From NCBI GenBank assembly GCA_021613535.1, contig CP075495.1, positions 13,888,001 to 13,952,000 of the forward strand: a stretch of 64,000 nucleotides of DNA, read 5' to 3'. A program made the position numbers and the translations under genes. The notes beneath the pieces are model-generated. The model did no database searches. It saw nothing but the letters and a program-made list of their open reading frames with translations, and was not told where the DNA came from. This document shows, piece after piece, positions 3,701 through 41,045 of this stretch (within the stretch, counting starts at the first letter, position 1; each line of letters starts with the position of its first letter). Source of the stretch: Adineta vaga (lineage: Eukaryota > Animalia > Rotifera).

Positions 3701-5788
3701 CTTGAAGTCTTAGATTTTTATCATCCATTTAGTGTTTCATTTGCTCGCAATATGGTGCTTACTTATAATTTAAGACATCGCGTAGATATTTACTTTTTAA
3801 ATAAAAATAAAATTCATGTTTTTATACTTTTTCTTTTCTCTTTCCACTTACTTAGGTTGTCTTTCGGAAAATAGCAGATGTTAAACGCGAACGTGAATTA
3901 GCTGAAACAAGAAAAAATGAAGGCCTAGATCAGATTAGTTCCGATCATCCAGTACGAAAATTAATATCAAAATTTCGTAAAATATCTCAAGAAAATCGTG
4001 CTGCTTCCCAAAATAATCCAAATACATCTGTTTCTTCAACAACATCCACTAGTTCATCTCAGCCACCGCAATCCCAACAACAACAATCAACAGCAGGTGC
4101 AATGTTACCTTCTATACCCGAAACAACTATTCAGCCACCAAGTGCAGAACCACTTGATTCATCGTCAACATCAACAAGTACAATTGGTTCATCATCATCA
4201 GCACTTCAACTTCTACAATTACCTTTCTCATCTACAAACAAACAACGAGATAAATTAGAAACTATTTCAGAACGCATTGAAACACAAGTTTCAGAAATCT
4301 CACAAATAACATCTTTGAATCAAAGTCCACCATTACAACGACATCCGAAATCAAGTAAATGGAAATGGTTAAAAGCTGGTTCAACTGAACCAGAAAACGA
4401 TATAACTAAACCTTTAGTTCCAACTCTCAAACCAGCACCGGTTCAATCACAAAGTACGAATCCATTTGATCCAAATTTATCCGATGATGATGCACTCTCA
4501 AAATCAACAGATGGGAGAAGAGCATCGATTCCACTTAGTTTATTTGTACCAAGAGAAGCTCGTGGTATGAATTTAAAAGCATCTGAAGAAGAAAATGATG
4601 AACAAGTAAAAATAAATGAGGTTTTTCATTTAAATAATTTCTAAAAGCTAATCTTTTCTGTAAAAATAGAAACTATTGGATGAATCTCATTCCGATATAA
4701 ATACATCATTTGGTCCACATCGTAGTGTATCATCACAATATGTTGAACATCAATTATTATCTTCATTAATTGAAATTAAAAATGATTTGAGTAATGAAGT
4801 GCGTACATTAACTAAGCGCATGTCGCATATTGATGAACAGATTAGTCAGATTTTTCATTTTCTTTCTCCATTAAATACATCAGTTAAAAATAATTTTACT
4901 CCCATTGTAAGACCAGTTCCATCCTCACCACCACGAAAGCGATCTTCGCCTCAAGCTATGCCATTATCACCCTTAGCAACATCATTATCACCTGAAACTA
5001 ATGTGACATCCGTAGCAATATCTCCATTATTTGAAACACCATCATTTTACTCAGATTTAACGTCAAAAACGATGAATTTCGATGCAAATCAATCATCACA
5101 ACCAACCACAGAAATGCAAAATATTCCTCGAAAATCAAAAACAACAAGCGATCATACTCTTATAACACCACCATTACGTCATATAAGTGATTTTGATGCA
5201 GGTGCTCTTTCGATTCCTCCACCACCATCCATTTATAATCGTACAACTAGTTCTACCATTGCTAGTTTAACCGCTTCGCCTGCATCTCGAGGTTCCATAT
5301 CCAATAAAATTGCACCAGCACCTATCACCTCATCATCATCATCTGTTAGTCCAAAACATACATTCAGTACTGCATTTCAACCGATATCCAATACACGTTT
5401 AAATCCAGGTCGTTCACCTAAACCAAAAACTCGTTTACAACATACTCGAAGTAGTACTAGATCTCAAACAAAGTATCCTGAAAAATCAACAATTATTGAA
5501 CTTGAATCACCAACACAAATAGATGTATTAAATAAAACTGAACCACTTCTGCCGGTTTCAAATAAACCTATTTCAACAAGTAAATCAAGTAGTAGTGTAT
5601 TTCGTCGTTTAATAGCCAATACTAGTGGTAGTACAGAAAAACCTACGATGAGTTCATCATCAACTCTTCTCTATCCACCAACAAGTGATGATGAACATCC
5701 AATGAGTCCTGCTAGTTCTGGTAATGACGATGATGATTATCGACCATTAACATCTTCATCGAGTAAACATCATCAAACACCATTATAA
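782..5788 (+). CDS. eag: Ether-a-go-go (Kv10/KCNH1-like) voltage-gated K+ channel, multi-exon; first coding exon not found and probably upstream of the window
   Basis: Spliced exons give the PAS domain ([23 protein letters not shown]), [17 protein letters not shown]4 [11 protein letters not shown], pore [15 protein letters not shown] ([16 protein letters not shown]...[12 protein letters not shown]), [13 protein letters not shown] and a C-terminal coiled coil. Introns are GT-AG. Confidence 0.95.
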
Positions 5789-32146: not shown

Positions 32147-35100
32147 TCAAAACCACATAAACAAAATACTTGGCGTACACTTATAAGATAATTTTCTAAG
32201 TATATTCGATCGAATCCAATTTGCAATTATATCAGGCTCATCGAAATCACATTTGATTGTGAGTGATCGTAATTGTTCGACTGTTTTCTTTTGACTACCA
32301 ATGAATAATAATGTCAAGAATCGATAACAATCTTCCGTTGATGATACACTAACGGAAAGGATTTCTAATCGATGAACTAATTGATGGATAGGATGATACC
32401 GATCAAAATCATGAAAGATTTCATAAACAGTCAACGAACAAAGATTGTTTTTGATAACTTGAGATGATAAAGAAATGATTTTTGACCAACTATGATATGT
32501 TGAAAGTGTAATTGAATAAAGTTGAGTATATCTTTCAATGAGACTGAGAAGAAAGAATCGCGAACAATCATCTAATTGTACTGTTAAATAGCGAAGATGT
32601 TTGTGATCAATTATTGAATAAAGATAAAGAAGAAATGATTGTTCATGAAATGATTTATTTGATATGAGTGTTAATGATGTGACATTTGGATAGAGAAATT
32701 GAGAGAGATTTTTTGGAAGATCATTTGGAATTGTATCGATCAATATTCGAAGATCACGTACACAGGAATAAATATTATTATTAACGACAAATGCTTTCGA
32801 GGGTCTAATAGAAAAAGAACAAAACAAAGTACACATATACATACTTATCTATATAGACAGAGAAAATTGAAGGGAAACAAGAAATAGCACTTACACGATA
32901 TCAAGACGTTGTTTAAGATATGGTTTGGTATGTAAACGTAGAATAGTGTTAAATGAATATGTATAGATTTGAGATGTGAATAACCAATTTCGTTTGAGAA
33001 AAAATTCATTTGTTATAAATGTATTTGTATAGATTTGAGATTGAATAGGTAATTCAATCGAACAATGAAAATGTTCTAATGATACGAACGATTGCAATAA
33101 AGATTGCCATCGTTGATCATCAATATAATCAAGAGATGATTGACTTTGTGCATCTGTTTTAAAAAAGAATTTCAATGTATCTAAATGAATGAATTGATTT
33201 GTAAAGAATTCTTCAATTTGATGAAATGGTATATTATTAATTGTTGAAATTTTCAAATGACGAATTGATGAATGAATTGTAGGAAATTGTTTTATTGATA
33301 TTTGTTTCGAAAAATTTTGAAAATCTGTATAGATTCGAACTGTCAATGATTGAACATTGGGTATATAATTTAATAATCGATCTATATGAAAAGAAATGAA
33401 TATTAATATGACTCGATTTTGTTCATATTTTCTAAGTATTATAAGAATTCTTTCCGACAATGAATATAATAAAGAAAGATTATGCGTGCTTTTTGTTTTA
33501 TTAATAGGATATGAAACATAATGACACAAGGGAATTCTTTATTCTTGGGGTTTTTTCCGTTTTTATTTCAGATGGACATCAATCAAGATATGTTATCAAA
33601 AGTAGCTTAACTAATGTTTAGTATTGTCAATTATCAAAAGACAAAAGAAGAAGAAGAAAAAAAAAGAGAAAGATCCTGTCTAAGTAAACGATGTATGACA
33701 TTGAATTTTGACATTCATTAGAAGCTCCAGGAATCTGTGAAAAAAAGGTCTTTGAAGAGATGTCACATTCATTTTTCTTCGCAGTGTGATTTCAGTTAAT
33801 TAACACATTATCACTTTTCTTTTCGACTTGGATAAATGTCTGTTGTCTTAGCATCATTCCAATGATCTTTTGACAAACTGTAACAAAAGAACACATGTTC
33901 TATTCGAAACCCTATTATAAATTCAGAATATATATGTATACAGATCTGATCATTTGCATAACGTCAGAATTACAAAACAATAAAATCGAGTGTATACTAT
34001 CGTGACATTAAATTTCTGTCTTTTTTTTTGTTCGCTTTTAATAAAAGTATAAGAAAACAAATATATATATTGCTCGTTTGTATGCTATTCTACTAATCTC
34101 TCTCTCTCTCTATGGATGTATGTAAGTGTTTACTACTAGTCGACAATGTTCAAGGTCATTTCACGTACAAAATGGTTTCAATTTCCATTAGTGTGTCAAC
34201 ATTATATTAGACATCAGAAAAAGACATGACAGTCGGCGGTTTTTTTTTCTTCTGCTATTGAGAGAATATTTCAGTAAGACAAACAAATCGATTTCTAGTC
34301 AGTCTCTAACTAAATAGTTTCTTTCCTGCATTTTCTATATTTCTCCTTTCTTTTTTCTCTTTCTTCTTCTTCTTCTCCTCTCCTCTCCTCTTCTCTTCCT
34401 CTCCTTTTTCCTTTGATTCTTCTTATTCGCTGTTGATTATCGTTGCAAAATAGAGTTATTCAATAAAAAAAGAAAAAGAAATTGTTTTTTTCGAAAGATT
34501 ATTTTTAGTCTCTTTGATCCTTCTACCATTATGTATACATCTGATTATTCCTTGTTTTTTTTCATTTTAGAAATCCTTGCCATTGAGTGATTTTTCCGAC
34601 GCTAATATTGCACTGTCTGTATACTCGTCAAGAAGATACAACTACACCTAAAAGGTCGTTAAAGAACGGGAACTGGTCTGTGTACGCGCGTGTGTTTGTA
34701 TGTGTATGTGTGTGTGTGCGCGCGCTATTTTTCTTCTTCTTCCGCTCTTTCTTCATCCGATGGGGATGCAGACTTAGTTTCGTCAAGTGAGAAGATAGAC
34801 TATACACGCATACATCCCTTTCCATCATTCATTTCTTGATCGATGGCGATCATTGTGCGGTTCTTTTTCCATCTAATCTTATTGTCATGCATCTTTGTGC
34901 AATATTCATCAACAATGAATGATACGAACTATATTCTTTGTACATCACGATGTTCACAAGTTAACGTTTACTTTAATGATTTATTAAATTTACCCCCATA
35001 TTGTCGTGAAGAAAGTTCTTATGATTATGCATTATCCTGTGGTGTTACTTATGATATTCATTTCGATCGACAATATGTATCCATAGATTTTATCGCTAGT

Positions 35101-36436
35101 AATGATACAAATGATTTGGATAAACAAAGCTTGAAAGAAATTCTTACGCAAACGACTGAATTAAAATTTGAAACTTATACCGGATATGATTCCTATGCAA
35201 TAACGCGAAAGTTTACTTGCAATACAAACAAAGATTGTGCACGTGACTTCTATGAAAATACAATTTCGAAATTAGTTCATGATGGTAAAGTTACATTACA
35301 TACAATTAAAGATAAATTATATAATTCAACAGCATTAATTGGACCGGGATCACGACGACGTTGTACGGATAGTAATAAAAAAGGAAATAAAACCTCAGTC
35401 AAATGTGGTCATGGTTTATGTTATACACGTCTTGAAACTTACGAATTTGATTCCGGAAAAAATACAAAAAAACAAAAATGCCAGGAATCTGAAGGATCTT
35501 ATCTTCGTAGTGAGATCGAACGTCATTCACGAAAATCAACACGAGGAAAAGAAATATTGGAATATGTTTGTAATAAAAATGTTTGTAATCGAAATGATTT
35601 AATTCCAAAAATTCAACAACTTATTAATGATTATATTCAATGGAATCCTGTTCAAGAAGAAGCAAAAGAAACACCTTCATCATCACGAACTGTAGCAGAA
35701 AAAACTGGTAAAAATTTCTCAATAAAACAAACTATATTCTCGCCTATTTTAGTTTCATTTGTCATTCTTTTACAATTTTTCATTTGATTTTCTCACTCTT
35801 ATCTTTTTCTTTTCTTCATTCTTGTTTAGATCTAGTTTTCAAATAAAAATCTTATTTACCTAAACAATTCATTGTACAATAATCCAAGACAAGTGTTTCT
35901 AAACTTGTTGATGGATTTAAATCATCAAAATCATTGACATCGAGTAATGGAAGTTGACACAAACGTAATTTCGGCATTTGAGTAAATATTTTTTGCAAAA
36001 CAAATAATCGTTCTCGATCGAGGCCATTAAAATTTGTTGATTGAATTTTGAAAGTATTCATTTGTTGGATTATTAAAAAGAAATCTTTTAAATCAAATAA
36101 ACGTCGTAATTCATGTGAATTGACATGAGCTAAAGTTAATATTCGAAGATTAGTCATGGATTTAAATGAAATCCTTGAAAAGATATTAATAGTCCATTTA
36201 TTTGATATTTTAAGTGCATAAATTTGATTCGTTGATATTGTTTGAATAAGTTCTTCATATTGAAATTTTGATAAATGTGATAGATCAAGTTGGAATAAAC
36301 GTTGACAAAGCAATAGAGAAAAACGTTTATTTAAATTTTCAAAACTTTTTATTAAATTCTTTGCTGATAAATAATCAAAAATTTCATAGAAAAGTTCATT
36401 AGCTAAGAATTCAAATTGATTCTTACGTATACTCAT
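32147..36436 (-). CDS. F-box-like / leucine-rich (RNI-like) protein, 3 exons (36436-35860, 33381-about 32895, about 32804-32147)
   Basis: N-terminal F-box-like FEFLANELFYEIFDYLS..LIKSFENLNKRF. A phase-1 splice TTAG|gtaaat...catatag|AT joins to DRLLNYIPNVQSLTV, and a phase-2 splice GT|gtaagt...tattag|A joins to PSKAF. All three ORF-track fragments join in frame. Confidence 0.85.
34340..34415. repeat. Polypyrimidine (TTC/CTC)n tract
   Basis: Direct reading of the sequence. Confidence 0.85.
34843..35787 (+). CDS. Secreted, probably GPI-anchored Cys-rich protein (Ly6/three-finger-like CN motif), intronless, nested in the F-box gene intron
   Basis: Signal peptide, two Cys-rich halves ending CNTNKDC and CNKNVCN, a hydrophobic C-terminal tail with no cytoplasmic segment, and AATAAA near 35842. 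Confidence 0.85.
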   Translation: MAIIVRFFFHLILLSCIFVQYSSTMNDTNYILCTSRCSQVNVYFNDLLNLPPYCREESSYDYALSCGVTYDIHFDRQYVSIDFIASNDTNDLDKQSLKEILTQTTELKFETYTGYDSYAITRKFTCNTNKDCARDFYENTISKLVHDGKVTLHTIKDKLYNSTALIGPGSRRRCTDSNKKGNKTSVKCGHGLCYTRLETYEFDSGKNTKKQKCQESEGSYLRSEIERHSRKSTRGKEILEYVCNKNVCNRNDLIPKIQQLINDYIQWNPVQEEAKETPSSSRTVAEKTGKNFSIKQTIFSPILVSFVILLQFFI

Positions 36437-36474
36437 ATCTATAAGAAGAAAGAAAAGTATAACAGATTTTTTAT

Positions 36475-38805
36475 TTACAATTCTTTTTCAAAATCATCTT
36501 TCGTATAAACAGAAGAAATATCAATTAAACGTCGTGGTTGAATATAGTCAAGAAATATGAAGATTATATAAGAAAGTATAGCTACAAAACTCATGATAAA
36601 ACCACTAACAAATCCACATTGTTTATATCTAAATAGAATTTTAATTTCAATATAAATCTTTGTTTTTTATTTTTGTTCGGGGGGTTGTTAACAAACCTTT
36701 GAATACGTTCTTTTAAATTTATTTTCTCTTTTGTCATTATATGTTTATAAACAACTTCCGTATTTTCCGTTACATAACGCCATGAATACCAATTTTGAAT
36801 TTTTTCATGCCATTGATTTGCATCAGGTATTTGTCCAAGTTGAATTCGATCGATTGCATTACATAGACCATGAAAAACATCTATTAGATCAATTAGACAA
36901 TAATAAAAAACAAACAAACAAAAAAAACCCGACCATCTATGGTTGCTTCACAGAGAACCATTATATCTGATTGTGTATTTTCCGATGGAAGGACTTCAGG
37001 AATTCCACCAACTTTCGTTGAAACAACAAGTAAACTTGAAAATAAAAAGAAGCAAAACAAAAGACTTTAATCAAGTCATATTTTTCTATTTTGTCGATTC
37101 CTCGAGGATAAAGATAAGTTAATTAGAGCAGTTGGGAATCGATAACTTCTTCTCAAGGTTCTTCAGTCATTATTTTATGATATCTTTTCTATAGAAAGAT
37201 GTTTTCTTCCTACCCACAAGCAGCCGCTTCAACAATTGCCATACAAAATGCTTCAGTTAATGATGTATTCAAAAAAATATGACCACTGTTGAGAAAATCT
37301 CTCATTTTATCATGATTAACTGGACCCTCTGAAGAAGAAAAGAACAAAAAAAAGGAATATTGTTCAATAGATTGTTTATCATATCAACATTTACCTAATG
37401 CAACACGATCTTCAGTGCCTTCACGTTCAATTACTTCTCGAATATCAATTTCTTTTGGTCCATTACCAGCTAAAACATCAACAATATATATCTTCTATTG
37501 ATATAATTAGTTAAACCAACCAATTCTGAACTTAACAGTTGGATATTTTTGAAGTATTTTTGGCAAAATACCAATTAATAAATCAATTCCTTTTCGATAA
37601 ACAAGTCGACTAGCCACAATAATAACAACTAGAAAATCAAGAATCATCCATGTTTATTTATTTTTCTTCTTCTTCTTCTTCTTCTCTCTTCTTTTACTTT
37701 CATCAGCTAACGATGATGATGGACGAAGAGATATATCAGGTAGAAATGCGGACGCATCGACAGCATTCGGAATTACTGATACTTGCGATGATTTTAAATT
37801 AGCACGTAACATTGTGTTTTCTTTACTAAAAGAAAAAACAAAGCACAATAACAATAAAAGATCAAAGAACTCAATTTATGGAATTTCTTCCGGAATAGTT
37901 AATTATTCCTCTAAGTATTTGTTTTTCTCTACATATTTCCGGTTTTTATTAAATAAATCAAAAAGAAAAACGTCTTTTTAACTAATGGAAATGCTGTAGG
38001 TCATCAATCATAACGGGAATTCATTGTTGCTCTTTATTTTCTCACTAGGTAACCTTGAGGAATAAGATCGATGATTATCAAAAATGTCAAAAATTTTCAT
38101 TTTTTCACAAGAGAAATTCGAGAAAAATAAAGATATTAGTATCACTTACCAAGTATGTGATACACATATAACATGATGACAATCAACTAATGAAACTTGA
38201 AGAATTTTATTTGTTAATACTGAACTTAAATCAGCAAAACCAAATAATGAATGATCAGTAAAAACCGTATGAATACCAAGTGTTTTCGCATGATGCATAG
38301 TTTCATGAGCTAATGTTGAAAATGACTAAATCATCAAAGGAAAATCGATCAGATTTCAATAAAATCCTCATTTTTCTACCGAATGTCCATGAACAATAGT
38401 TATTTGTTCTCGAAGTAGAACCGAACGAATTAATGGTATTGTACTGAAAACAGTTGGTAAAATTGTATTATTATAAAAAGGTTTGTAAGGTAAATAATAG
38501 ACCTAATTAGAAAAATAATCGAAATTTTAAATAGAATCTTTGCTTGATGTTTACTTTAAGTCCATTGGTCATATAGCGAACACCTACACGATCATTATAA
38601 GCATGTGTAACAACGATCACTTTGTGATTACGGTCAATTAAACATTGTGATAATTGAAAGATGTGATTTTCTACTCCACCAATTAATGGATAGAAAAAAT
38701 CGGAAACCATACTAAAGGAAAAAGGAACTGAATTTTGAAGAAATAGTTTCTCTTTTTTTTCCTGACAGATATATACCATATATGATGTTTAATGAATGGA
38801 TTCAT
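36475..38805 (-). CDS. PIGA: Phosphatidylinositol N-acetylglucosaminyltransferase subunit A, multi-exon
   Basis: [100 protein letters not shown] and a C-terminal TM helix. Confidence 0.96.
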
Positions 38806-39750
38806 TTGATCTAGAACTATCAAATATATTTAATTGTCTTCATTGAGATAAGATCTACTATTCATCGTCTTTTTTCTTCTACTTCTGATAAAAAGATCGA
38901 TAAGCGTGTTCTTCGGTTCAATTCGAAATGCAAATATTGAATATTAATAGCCGAAACAACATGAAATAAAAAACAATGTATTTCTTTTCTCAGTGAAGCA
39001 TAACTAATAAATCAATTTGATGTCTTGTAAAGATCAAATAGTCTCATGAGAATCGCAATTGATTTATTTCCATCTAATATATTATTTATTATAATGATAT
39101 ACAATAACTTATGCTTCAATATTAATCTAAAATAAGAAAGAATTCGAATAGATATGTATTTATTCTTTGTAACCTATGACCATCATTTTCTTTTATCATA
39201 TGATTTCTAATAGTTCATTAATCGAATCCAAAGGAGAAAATCTTTTGATCAAATATTCATCCGTTTTCTTGTATGCATATCTTTTGTTTAATGATTAAAA
39301 CAAAAAAGAATGAGAGAAAAACGATAGACTAAAAGATAGTTGACAATGATCAATCAATTTTCTCATTTGACATTTAAGAAAACAAAAAAGAAAGGATTCA
39401 TCACACCGAAGAAAAATACTGCACATAAAAAATAAAAAGATCGAGGGTTTTTTCAATTGAATAGAAAAAGAAAAACGAGATAAACAATGTCACATCACGA
39501 TAGAAGAGAAACGAAATACAATTATATAGATAGTTTTTTTTAGAAAAAAAAAACAACAAAAAAGAGGAAAAATCATCTAAGATTCAGATCGGAATGATAA
39601 TAATATTGAAATGTTTTCTTTTTTGAAACATACAACATAGAAATGAGATACTTTCTCTTCGTTTAAGATACGACGAACAAACATCAAAGGAAAGCATTAA
39701 ATTGGAAAGAAAATGATTTTTTTCGGTTTGCTTGTTTGAGAACAATGAAT

Positions 39751-41045
39751 TTAACATTGACATTGATTTCCTTTTGCTGGAGAATCAGTAGCGCGAAGTT
39801 TTGTTGTATCTTTGGAATATTTACCAGCTGTATTACTATATGGACTTCCATTAGCATTATTATCATTGCTATCTTCAGATGCATCCGACATTTTCTCTAA
39901 GATAATATCCACTAGTCTGAAAAATTCCATCATTATTCATTTGAATCAAATCAAATCAAATCATTTCTTACCTTTCAAAAACAGCTTTGACATTAACATT
40001 CTCTTTTGCTGAAGTTTCAAAAAATTCCAAACCTAAAATAATAAAAATCAATCAATAGGATTTATCAAGAACTATTGTAAAGCAACACAAAGAAGGTCAT
40101 TAAAAAATTTCTATTCTCAAATGTTAGTACCGAGTTCGTTGGTAAATCTTTTTGCATTTTCTGTCTGAATAACTCTTTCATCTGCCATATCACATTTATT
40201 TCCAACAAGTATCACTGGAGTTTTCTCCCATGAGTGAATCTTTATTTGTAAAACCCTTGAAAATATAATATATATAATACAACACGAAAGCATAATAATC
40301 CCAAATAGATTATATAAAAACAAATATTTAAAGCGTACATCCACAAGAGATTTAAATAAAACTTTACCCAATTGATCAGCAAGACGTTGACCACGTTCTA
40401 GTGTTACAGCTCGATCTTGTTCCAAATCACATTTATTTCCAACAAGAACAACTTGTGCATTATCCCATGAATACATTTTTATTTGTGTACACCTGAAAAT
40501 AAGATTTGCTTGGATGTACGCTTTTCGTTCTTTTTTTTTCTTCTCCTCATTTATTCATCTACAAATTTGATCAATATCATTCATTTCAACTTACCAATCT
40601 TGTACAGCATTGAATGATTCTTCATTTGTAATGTCATACATTAAGATAAAACCCATTGCACCACGATAATATGCAGCTAAAAAGACATAAGATTTATTTG
40701 TGAAGAATGTAATGAATAAATAATCGTTACTTGTAATTGTACGATAACGTTCTTGACCAGCAGTATCCCATATTTGTAGTTTAACACGTTTATCTTGTCG
40801 AAATACGGTTTTAACCTTAAAATCAATTCCAACTGTACTAACAAATGCTGATGTAAATGAATCATCTGCATATCGAAAAAGCTAGAAGAAAACAAAAAAT
40901 AGTTTTCTTTCGATGCTAATTATCTTCATACAAATGATGTTTTTCCAACAGATGAATTTCCAATAATTAGTAATTTGAACATATAATCAAAATTTTGATC
41001 GGCTGCATCTTTTGCATTACCACCAGCAGTATTAGTTTGTGTCAT
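39751..41045 (-). CDS. Rab3: Rab3 small GTPase with a duplicated (mutually exclusive) fourth coding exon
   Basis: [83 protein letters not shown]-terminal CQC*. Confidence 0.97.

What the first reader, a model, noticed from the sequence alone, without database searches (positions are those of the whole stretch)
36434..36477. Operon-like junction: PIGA stop to F-box ATG is only 38 nt, with an unpaired splice acceptor (candidate SL trans-spliced polycistron)
Seen: the minus strand reads TAA-ATAAAAAATCTGTTATACTTTTCTTTCTTCTTATAG-AT-ATG. That is the PIGA stop with an overlapping AATAAA (36475-36470), a pyrimidine tract and an AG at 36440-36439, two bases before the next gene's ATG. The spacer has no room for a promoter or a cis intron, and using this AG from the last PIGA donor is out of frame with the F-box ORF, so it is not a fusion exon. 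Established: bdelloid rotifers have spliced-leader trans-splicing, and nematodes use it to resolve operons. Inference: this is a dicistronic transcript in which PIGA 3'-end formation and trans-splicing of the F-box gene occur almost at the same site, as in nematode SL1-type operons. I am not aware of such operons being characterised in this lineage.
Basis: partly seen in the sequence, partly recalled or inferred. Interest (0 to 1): 0.8.

Follow-up and report, generated by a model that had tools for sequence, protein, structure and literature searches.

The report
Conserved PIGA–F-box operon-like junction, rotifer
In a bdelloid rotifer, an F-box gene starts 38 bases after the stop of the GPI-anchor gene PIGA, directly behind a splice acceptor. 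Thirteen bdelloid lineages keep this layout, so it is a good candidate for a spliced-leader operon junction, but the RNA data I could reach showed neither the leader nor a two-gene transcript.

Summary
On the minus strand the PIGA stop is at 36477-36475, with AATAAA overlapping it at 36475-36470. A pyrimidine tract follows, then AG at 36440-36439 and the next gene's ATG at 36436. The gap between the two coding regions is 38 nt.

RNA contigs from four runs (three studies) confirm a 439-codon, 10-coding-exon PIGA. The "F-box ORF" is only exon 1 of a 573-codon, 3-exon gene. Its 2,478-nt first intron holds an expressed antisense gene.

The order PIGA, F-box exon 1, antisense gene is kept in 13 bdelloid lineages, including Adineta and Rotaria. 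The acceptor always lies 22-47 nt after the PIGA stop. The genome carries 42 spliced-leader (SL) genes.

Direct proof is missing. No contig crosses 36441-36497 and no SL was seen. One contig leaves the genome exactly at the AG, but only 3 letters lie beyond it.

One caveat: PIGA's own AG just before its ATG is a cis acceptor, so the motif alone does not prove trans-splicing.

My estimates are about 0.8 that this AG takes the SL and about 0.5 that the two genes are co-transcribed. The papers I searched report no rotifer operons. This scan has already noted at least 36 similar candidates elsewhere in this genome, and follow-up notes on some of them report RNA support.

The parts
36475..38810 (-). 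PIGA gene (GPI GlcNAc-transferase catalytic subunit). It has a 5'UTR exon reaching at least 38806 down to 38777, then coding exons 38711-38553 (ATG at 38710), 38500-38380, 38325-38150, 37825-37698, 37628-37521, 37469-37395, 37328-37214, 37034-36935, 36881-36697 and 36628-36475. This makes 439 codons.
   Evidence: Splice joints with GT..AG ends appear in four RNA contig runs. The 37697-37629 intron is read from the sequence, because its joint lies in a skipped repeat. The exon lengths sum to 1317 nt, in frame. Pfam Glyco_transf_4 and PIGA hit the exon-1 ORF. Rotaria orthologues of 434-445 aa carry PF08288 and PF00534.
36475..36477 (-). PIGA stop codon TAA
   Evidence: The C-terminal peptide is conserved up to this stop in other lineages.
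36470..36475 (-). AATAAA poly(A) signal overlapping the stop codon
   Evidence: AATAAA or AATAAT overlaps or abuts the PIGA stop in 10 of 13 lineages. Its use is inferred, not shown.
36437..36474 (-). The 38-nt spacer between the two coding regions. I predict it serves as the PIGA 3'UTR and also as the branch site, pyrimidine tract and acceptor of the next gene.
   Evidence: Its sequence does not align between lineages, but the stop-to-AG distance is held at 22-47 nt, median 36.
36439..36440 (-). 3' splice acceptor AG, the candidate spliced-leader (SL) trans-splice site. The exon would start at 36438.
   Evidence: An AG behind a pyrimidine tract is present in 13 of 13 lineages, and the first two exon bases are AT in 12 of 13. 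No cis joint into it appears in four RNA runs. X1 record 4 follows the genome from 36265 to 36440 and then has 3 letters unlike it. The SL ends in AG.
35860..36436 (-). Coding part of exon 1 of the F-box-like gene (ATG at 36436, 192 codons plus 1 nt)
   Evidence: The 35860|33381 joint is seen in all four RNA runs. Orthologues are 52-71% identical, and conservation stops exactly at the donor ('...CLG'). Pfam F-box hits are below threshold at residues 8-47 in 4 of 4 orthologues.
33382..35859 (-). The 2,478-nt first intron of the F-box-like gene
   Evidence: A joint skipping 2478 nt with GT..AG ends (read as CT..AC on the + strand) appears in X1, X2, X13 and X15.
34843..35787 (+). Antisense gene nested in that intron: an intronless 314-codon ORF with a hydrophobic N-terminus and no Pfam family
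   Evidence: Contigs cover 34465-35431 and beyond at the highest depths in the stretch. A 289-314 aa ORF sits in the same antisense position in all loci that reach that far.
32147..33381 (-). Exon 2 (33381 to about 32895) and exon 3 (32804-32147, including the stop) of the F-box-like gene. The total is 573 codons.
   Evidence: Contigs cover 32897-33381, and their loose end matches the window from 32804 down. The frame arithmetic gives 577+487+655 = 1719 nt.

Best explanation
This is an operon-type junction without a true intercistronic region, as in Ciona operons and the SL1-type operons of C. elegans.

Proposed mechanism:
- RNA polymerase II starts at the PIGA promoter, in the roughly 0.9-kb gap below Rab3, and reads through PIGA into the F-box-like gene.
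- The 36 nt after the PIGA stop do two jobs. They act as the PIGA 3'UTR, with AATAAA on the stop codon and a U-rich downstream element. They also act as branch site, pyrimidine tract and AG for adding the 23-nt rotifer spliced leader (SL) at 36438.
- That would give the F-box mRNA a 25-nt capped leader.
- Because the predicted cleavage window (10-30 nt after AATAAA) lies on the acceptor, a given precursor probably yields either a PIGA mRNA or an F-box mRNA, not both.

Shown: the anatomy, expression and splicing of both genes, the SL genes in the genome, and deep conservation of the junction.

Inferred: SL addition at this AG, the position of the PIGA poly(A) site, and co-transcription.
For: - Sequence anatomy.
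- The SL machinery is present: 42 genomic copies of the SL followed by GT, and the SL sequence is in PMC3795323.
- No cis donor joins this AG in four RNA runs, although every PIGA intron and the 2.5-kb F-box intron are recovered.
- X1 record 4 departs from the genome exactly above the AG. This is what an SL ending in AG would give.
- Thirteen lineages with F-box identity of 52-71% keep the acceptor 22-47 nt after the PIGA stop. The spacer sequence is otherwise free to change, and the ATG can move 11-22 nt away (loci).
- A poly(A) hexamer sits on or next to the stop in 10 of 13 lineages.
- The neighbouring same-strand gap, Rab3 to PIGA, is about 940 nt in this window. No gene is called in the roughly 1 kb upstream of PIGA in the Rotaria loci. 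The 38-nt gap is therefore exceptional locally.
- The layout meets the genomic criterion used for Ciona operons (PMC1488885).
Against: - No contig in any of four runs covers 36441-36497, so there is neither a dicistronic RNA nor a PIGA 3' end. The PIGA contigs stop at 36498-36548, before the stop codon.
- The SL itself was not seen. Only 3 unaligned letters lie beyond the AG, and a cis exon ending in AG would look the same.
- PIGA's own AG|T ATG is a cis acceptor, so the motif is ambiguous.
- A search for SL joined to the F-box start in JGI metagenome contigs gave only chance hits.
- Conserved tight spacing is also compatible with a downstream promoter embedded in PIGA.
Confidence: 0.5

Rival explanations
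1. The AG is trans-spliced, but there is no operon. The F-box-like gene has its own promoter inside the last exons or introns of PIGA. Its primary transcript starts there, and the spliced leader (SL) replaces this overlapping outron at 36438. PIGA transcripts terminate independently.
For: Most SL-accepting genes in nematodes and Ciona are monocistronic with their own promoters (PMC1488885). No dicistronic contig was found. PIGA has two unusually long introns, 324 and 179 nt, that could hold regulatory DNA. The contig depths of the two genes are not equal, though this is weak evidence.
Against: A promoter would have to sit inside conserved coding sequence in 13 lineages. Nothing in this model explains why the acceptor must stay within 22-47 nt of the PIGA stop while the spacer sequence itself drifts. 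No contig starts or ends point to an internal start, although contigs cannot show starts.
Confidence: 0.3
2. The AG is an ordinary cis acceptor. An unannotated 5'UTR exon of the F-box-like gene lies further upstream, within or above PIGA, and is spliced to 36438, just as PIGA's own 5'UTR exon is spliced to the AG one base before its ATG.
For: PIGA shows exactly this design: donor at 38776, acceptor AG at 38713-38712 and ATG at 38710, seen as a joint or a matching loose end in X1, X2 and X15. X1 record 4 would look the same if the upstream exon ended in AG.
Against: No joint into 36438 from any donor appears in four runs, although all other introns of the stretch were recovered. Such an intron would have to span part of PIGA on the same strand, far longer than the 51-69 nt typical here. 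The acceptor tracks the PIGA stop, not any conserved upstream exon.
Confidence: 0.12
3. The closeness has no functional meaning. Transcription of the F-box-like gene starts in or next to the spacer, the AG is unused, and the pyrimidine tract is just AT/T-rich filler in a compact genome.
For: The genome is AT-rich and compact, and the first 170 nt of the F-box mRNA are poorly covered in three of four runs.
Against: The AG and pyrimidine tract are kept in 13 of 13 lineages, including a GC-rich one (L007), while the rest of the spacer is not alignable. Such sites are rare in the window. A contig reaches the AG and then diverges instead of ending inside the spacer.
Confidence: 0.05

Closest known systems
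Ciona intestinalis SL-resolved operons without intercistronic DNA (Satou et al. 2006, PMC1488885)
   Same: The genes lie on the same strand less than 100 nt apart. A single spliced leader (SL) serves both monocistronic and operonic genes. The downstream acceptor lies where the upstream mRNA is expected to end, and the two genes have unrelated functions.
   Different: In Ciona the upstream poly(A) site was mapped onto the acceptor AG, and both SL-ESTs and dicistronic cDNAs were obtained. None of the three was obtained here. This junction has a canonical AATAAA, which most Ciona operons lack according to that paper.
C. elegans SL1-type operons (Williams et al. 1999, as described in PMC1488885)
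   Same: There is little or no intercistronic sequence. The upstream gene has AATAAA, and the downstream gene would be spliced to the general leader rather than an operon-specific one. The upstream 3' end and the downstream 5' end are expected to compete.
   Different: It is a different phylum with an unrelated SL. In nematodes these operons are a minor class alongside SL2 operons. No second leader is known in rotifers, and I searched for only one leader sequence.
Oikopleura dioica operons (23-30 nt intercistronic regions, cited in PMC1488885)
   Same: The spacer size range is similar (22-47 nt from stop to AG), the genome is compact with short introns, and there is a single SL.
   Different: The Oikopleura figures are distances from poly(A) site to acceptor. 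Here only the distance from stop codon to acceptor is known.
Operon candidates noted earlier by this scan in the same genome (for example s1-489416, s1-498426, s1-484553, s1-484586)
   Same: They share the same architecture: same-strand genes tens of bases apart, with an acceptor just before the downstream ATG, kept across bdelloids. Follow-up notes on some report the SL or a poly(A) tail at the acceptor.
   Different: Those are other loci, and I did not check them. This one is a two-gene case with a lineage-specific F-box-like downstream gene and no direct RNA proof.

Membership tests
SL-resolved operon, type without intercistronic region (Ciona / C. elegans SL1-type) | Adjacent genes on the same strand, less than about 100 nt apart | tested here: met
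   38 nt from stop to ATG and 36 nt from stop to the end of the AG. Both genes are expressed and spliced on the minus strand.
SL-resolved operon, type without intercistronic region (Ciona / C. elegans SL1-type) | The organism performs spliced-leader (SL) trans-splicing | tested here: met
   The window's genome holds 42 copies of the published rotifer SL followed by a GT donor, against 0 for the reversed control. The SL sequence is in PMC3795323 Table 1.
SL-resolved operon, type without intercistronic region (Ciona / C. elegans SL1-type) | The downstream mRNA carries the SL at the acceptor on the boundary | tested here: inconclusive
   One contig (X1 record 4) leaves the genome exactly above the AG, with only 3 extra letters. 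No SL loose end is listed. Three runs do not cover the first 170 nt of the gene. The metagenome scan for SL joined to the F-box start gave only chance hits.
SL-resolved operon, type without intercistronic region (Ciona / C. elegans SL1-type) | An unresolved polycistronic precursor exists | tested here: inconclusive
   No contig spans 36441-36497 in four runs. Assembled contigs drop rare precursors, so this does not show absence.
SL-resolved operon, type without intercistronic region (Ciona / C. elegans SL1-type) | The upstream mRNA 3' end lies at or next to the trans-splice acceptor | tested here: inconclusive
   AATAAA lies 29 nt before the AG, so cleavage is predicted on the acceptor. However, the PIGA contigs end at 36498-36548 and no poly(A) tail was seen.
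SL-resolved operon, type without intercistronic region (Ciona / C. elegans SL1-type) | The downstream gene has no promoter of its own | not testable with these tools
   This needs cap-selected 5' ends or nascent RNA.
C. elegans SL2-type operon | An intercistronic region of about 100 nt with a U-rich element, and a dedicated second leader | tested here: not met
   The spacer is 22-47 nt in all lineages. All 42 SL-gene matches carry one and the same leader sequence. I did not search for other leaders.
PIGA (GT4 glycosyltransferase, GPI anchor synthesis), upstream gene | Glyco_transf_4, PIGA and Glycos_transf_1 domains in a protein of about 440 aa with a C-terminal membrane segment | tested here: met
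   PF13439 and PF08288 hit the exon-1 ORF. The Rotaria orthologues in the same position carry PF13439, PF08288 and PF00534. The model is 439 codons, taken from the RNA joints. I searched exon by exon only and did not search a joined protein.
F-box protein, downstream gene | An F-box domain of about 40-50 residues above the Pfam threshold | tested here: inconclusive
   PF00646 and PF12937 match residues 8-47 in 4 of 4 orthologues, but below the gathering score (E from 0.0014 to 0.19). UniRef calls the Rotaria orthologues 'F-box domain-containing protein'.

The most novel reading that the evidence does not exclude
PIGA and the F-box-like gene form a true dicistronic unit that has existed since the common ancestor of the sampled bdelloids. 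The PIGA poly(A) site and the spliced-leader acceptor overlap, so each precursor makes one mRNA or the other. Together with the scan's other candidates, this would make Rotifera a further animal phylum with spliced-leader operons of the Ciona type. The papers I could search do not report this.
Probability: 0.45. Interest if true: 0.7.

Novelty: new member of a known kind. Interest (0 to 1): 0.55.

Why it matters
Spliced-leader operons are documented in nematodes, tunicates, flatworms and chaetognaths. [quoted passage not shown]

A junction kept within 22-47 nt across deeply diverged bdelloid lineages is a ready-made, easily tested case. One SL-primed RT-PCR and one PCR across the junction would settle it.

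If it is confirmed, it bears on whether intercistron-less operons arise repeatedly wherever a single spliced leader exists. It also bears on gene annotation in bdelloids. Public models at this locus split the F-box gene in Rotaria and fuse it to PIGA in A. ricciae.

On its own, this locus adds one unproven example to a pattern the scan has already flagged many times in this genome.

Tried and rejected
1. Read laying on four RNA contig runs. It gave good gene models but nothing across 36441-36497 and no spliced leader (SL). The loose ends at 36312, 36369 and 36400 are paralogous F-box genes that share 30-50 nt, not alternative 5' exons; I translated them by eye from the consensus.
2. Scan of JGI metagenome contigs for the SL 3' end, an ATG and the conserved F-box motif. 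All 7 hits are chance matches inside unrelated, mostly GC-richer contigs.
3. Word search with the first 57 residues, hoping for partial products of short RNA contigs carrying an SL-derived N-terminal extension. There were no candidates.
4. Fetching contigs of JGI and ENA orthologues in the hope that they were metatranscriptomic. All are genomic DNA with PIGA introns still present.
5. Search for an ohnologous copy of the locus in the window's genome. There is none, only distant intronless paralogues at 32-41% identity.
6. Fusion-exon reading (PIGA donor to this AG). I rejected it on frame, and no such joint exists.
Protein lengths come from coordinate arithmetic.
Full report
**What is in the sequence**

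Read on the minus strand:
- The PIGA reading frame ends with TAA at 36477-36475.
- AATAAA occupies 36475-36470.
- A tract with 14 pyrimidines in 15 bases follows.
- The AG lies at 36440-36439, then 'AT', then ATG at 36436-36434.

The last PIGA exon holds 151 coding bases (clean translation), so the last donor (36697) is phase 2. Joining it to 36438 would read a different frame from the F-box ORF and stop at 36425-36423.

In the whole 64-kb window, only five sites combine a strong pyrimidine tract, AG, 0-2 bases and ATG, against 1.6 expected from shuffles. Only two of them precede a long ORF: this site and PIGA's own start.

**Which genome**

The window is C2:13888001-13952000 of a 100.8-Mb, six-contig assembly. 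Earlier notes of this scan name it Adineta vaga. From memory, the size and contig number fit the published chromosome-level assembly.

The 23-nt rotifer spliced leader (SL) listed in PMC3795323 occurs 42 times in this genome with a GT donor behind it. The reversed control occurs 0 times. The leader ends in ...AAGAG.

**Gene models from RNA**

I laid four runs from three studies. All proved to be RNA, because their contigs skip introns with GT..AG ends on the minus strand.

PIGA:
- It has a 5'UTR exon reaching at least 38806.
- A 65-nt 5'UTR intron (38776-38712) follows. Its acceptor AG lies one base before the ATG at 38710.
- Ten coding exons sum to 1317 nt, or 439 codons.
- One intron (37697-37629) is read from the sequence, because its joint falls in a repeat that the tool skips.
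- Pfam finds Glyco_transf_4 and PIGA in the first coding ORF. The Rotaria orthologues carry the full domain set.

The "F-box ORF":
- It is not a whole gene. In all four runs, 35860 is spliced to 33381, skipping 2,478 nt.
- Together with a third exon (32804-32147), the gene has 573 codons.
- That matches the 590-615-codon open frames of its distant intronless paralogues in the same genome.
- The long intron contains an antisense, intronless 314-codon ORF (34843-35787). This ORF has the highest contig depths in the stretch.
- F-box identity rests on sub-threshold Pfam matches at residues 8-47 in four of four orthologues and on UniRef names.

The lengths are arithmetic on coordinates.

**What the RNA says about the junction**

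It says little.
- PIGA contigs end at 36498-36500 (X1, X15) or at 36548 (X2, X13, next to a heterozygous site at 36547).
- F-box contigs end at 36221-36270, next to a heterozygous site at 36264.
- Only X1 has a contig (record 4, 179 nt, depth 4.4) over the first 170 nt of the gene. It follows the genome from 36265 up to 36440 and then has three letters that do not fit.
- Depth accounting shows that nothing else lies on 36441-36497 in X1 or X15.
- So there is no dicistronic contig, no visible poly(A) end for PIGA and no readable SL.

The break exactly above the AG is what an SL-joined mRNA would give, because the SL also ends in AG. A cis exon ending in AG would look the same.

No joint from any upstream donor into 36438 was reported, although every other intron in the stretch was.

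The loose ends at 36312, 36369 and 36400 belong to paralogous F-box genes that share the conserved motif.

Contigs cannot show ends and they drop rare forms, so none of this counts as absence.

PIGA's own start has the same look: pyrimidine tract, AG, one base, ATG. That AG is a cis acceptor (joint 38711|38777 in X1, with matching loose ends in X2 and X15). An AG just before an ATG is therefore not by itself a mark of trans-splicing in this genome.

**Comparative evidence**

This is the strongest result. The word search with exon 1 found orthologues at 52-71% identity. I fetched their contigs. They come from three Rotaria species, Adineta ricciae, and several unnamed bdelloids from Logan, ENA and JGI assemblies, one of them GC-rich (L007). 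All are genomic DNA, because the PIGA introns are still present.

In each of the 13 lineages:
- PIGA is followed on the same strand by F-box exon 1. In every locus that reaches far enough, the antisense gene comes next.
- The distance from the PIGA stop to the end of the acceptor AG is 22-47 nt, median 36.
- The AG sits behind a pyrimidine tract.

Further details:
- The first two exon bases are AT in 12 of 13 lineages.
- The spacer sequence itself is otherwise not conserved.
- In the two most distant lineages the ATG lies 14 and 22 nt behind the AG. In R. socialis the ancestral ATG has become ATA and the start has moved 9 nt.
- So the conserved element is the acceptor and its closeness to the PIGA stop, not a start-codon context.
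- AATAAA or AATAAT overlaps or abuts the stop codon in 10 of 13 lineages.

For comparison, the next same-strand gap upstream (Rab3 stop near 39751 to PIGA) is about 940 nt here. The Rotaria loci have no called gene in the roughly 1 kb above PIGA.

Protein conservation of exon 1 stops exactly at the donor, so the large intron is old too.

**Most likely mechanism**

The 36 nt behind the PIGA stop must hold both the PIGA 3'-end signals and the branch site, pyrimidine tract and AG of the next gene.

With the hexamer on the stop codon, cleavage 10-30 nt downstream falls on or just before the AG. This is the arrangement described for Ciona operons and for C. elegans SL1-type operons. In those, the upstream poly(A) site and the downstream trans-splice site coincide, and one precursor can probably make only one of the two mRNAs (PMC1488885).

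My estimates:
- About 0.8 that this AG receives the SL. This covers the operon model and the internal-promoter model together.
- About 0.5 that the F-box mRNA is made from a PIGA-promoted precursor.
- 0.3 for the main rival: a promoter for the F-box gene embedded in the 3' part of PIGA, with an outron overlapping PIGA.
- 0.12 for a cis 5'UTR exon.
- 0.05 for an unused AG.

**Comparison with what is known**

By the three criteria used for Ciona (dicistronic cDNA, SL-bearing 5' ends, and no intercistronic DNA), only the third is met here.

It is not an SL2-type operon. The spacer is too short, and all 42 SL-gene matches carry a single leader sequence.

Literature:
- A 2025 paper lists rotifers among lineages with "trans-splicing and operonic transcription", but it cites only older trans-splicing papers.
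- My searches for bdelloid operons found nothing else.

This scan has already noted at least 36 operon-type candidates elsewhere in this genome. Several follow-up notes report the SL or a poly(A) tail at the acceptor. I did not check them, and they are leads only.

**Verdict**

I file it as a new member of a known kind (an intercistron-less SL operon junction) in a phylum where the papers I searched do not document that kind. Interest is 0.55.

Noticed in passing
window 33382-35859 (intron) and 34843-35787 (+): The F-box-like gene has a 2,478-nt intron, against the usual 51-69 nt. It hosts an antisense, intronless 314-codon gene with a hydrophobic N-terminus, many cysteines and no Pfam family. 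This gene has the highest RNA contig depths in the stretch. The nested arrangement is kept in all bdelloid loci that reach that far.
   Followed up: partly
window 38712-38810: PIGA has a 65-nt 5'UTR intron whose acceptor lies one base before the ATG at 38710. The spliced leader exon carries a short out-of-frame upstream ORF (ATG at 38805). The intron-retaining form (X13) opens an in-frame upstream ATG at 38779. A further acceptor-like 'TTCTAG|AT' sits at 38812-38811, 4 nt above the end of the longest contig, so PIGA itself may be trans-spliced.
   Followed up: partly
L013-L017 (Rotaria) and L018 (A. ricciae, protein P0023): Public gene models disagree with the RNA-based model. The Rotaria annotations split the F-box-like gene into a 191-194 aa protein and a roughly 400 aa protein on either side of the antisense gene. 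The A. ricciae model P0023 fuses the PIGA C-terminus to the middle of F-box exon 1.
   Followed up: partly
L015/L016 near 3990-4003: In Rotaria socialis the ancestral start codon behind the acceptor has become ATA. Translation must start 3 codons downstream, while the acceptor is unchanged.
   Followed up: no
G000, for example C1:2551158-2551338, C1:7347777-7347958, and the C5:9884354-9925971 cluster: Many of the 42 spliced-leader (SL) RNA genes lie in divergent head-to-head pairs with about 131 nt between the two SL starts, and they cluster on C5. Each pair may share a promoter region.
   Followed up: no
window 36264, 36547 and 32896: Sites where the RNA runs carry another base or both bases (A/G at 36264, G>A at 36547, G>A at 32896). 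The first two coincide with contig breaks and probably explain part of the poor coverage near the junction.
   Followed up: no
window 39751-41045 (-): Rab3 lies upstream of PIGA on the same strand, about 940 nt away. A Ras-family exon also lies upstream of PIGA in the distant lineage L030, so the order Rab3, PIGA, F-box is probably old.
   Followed up: no
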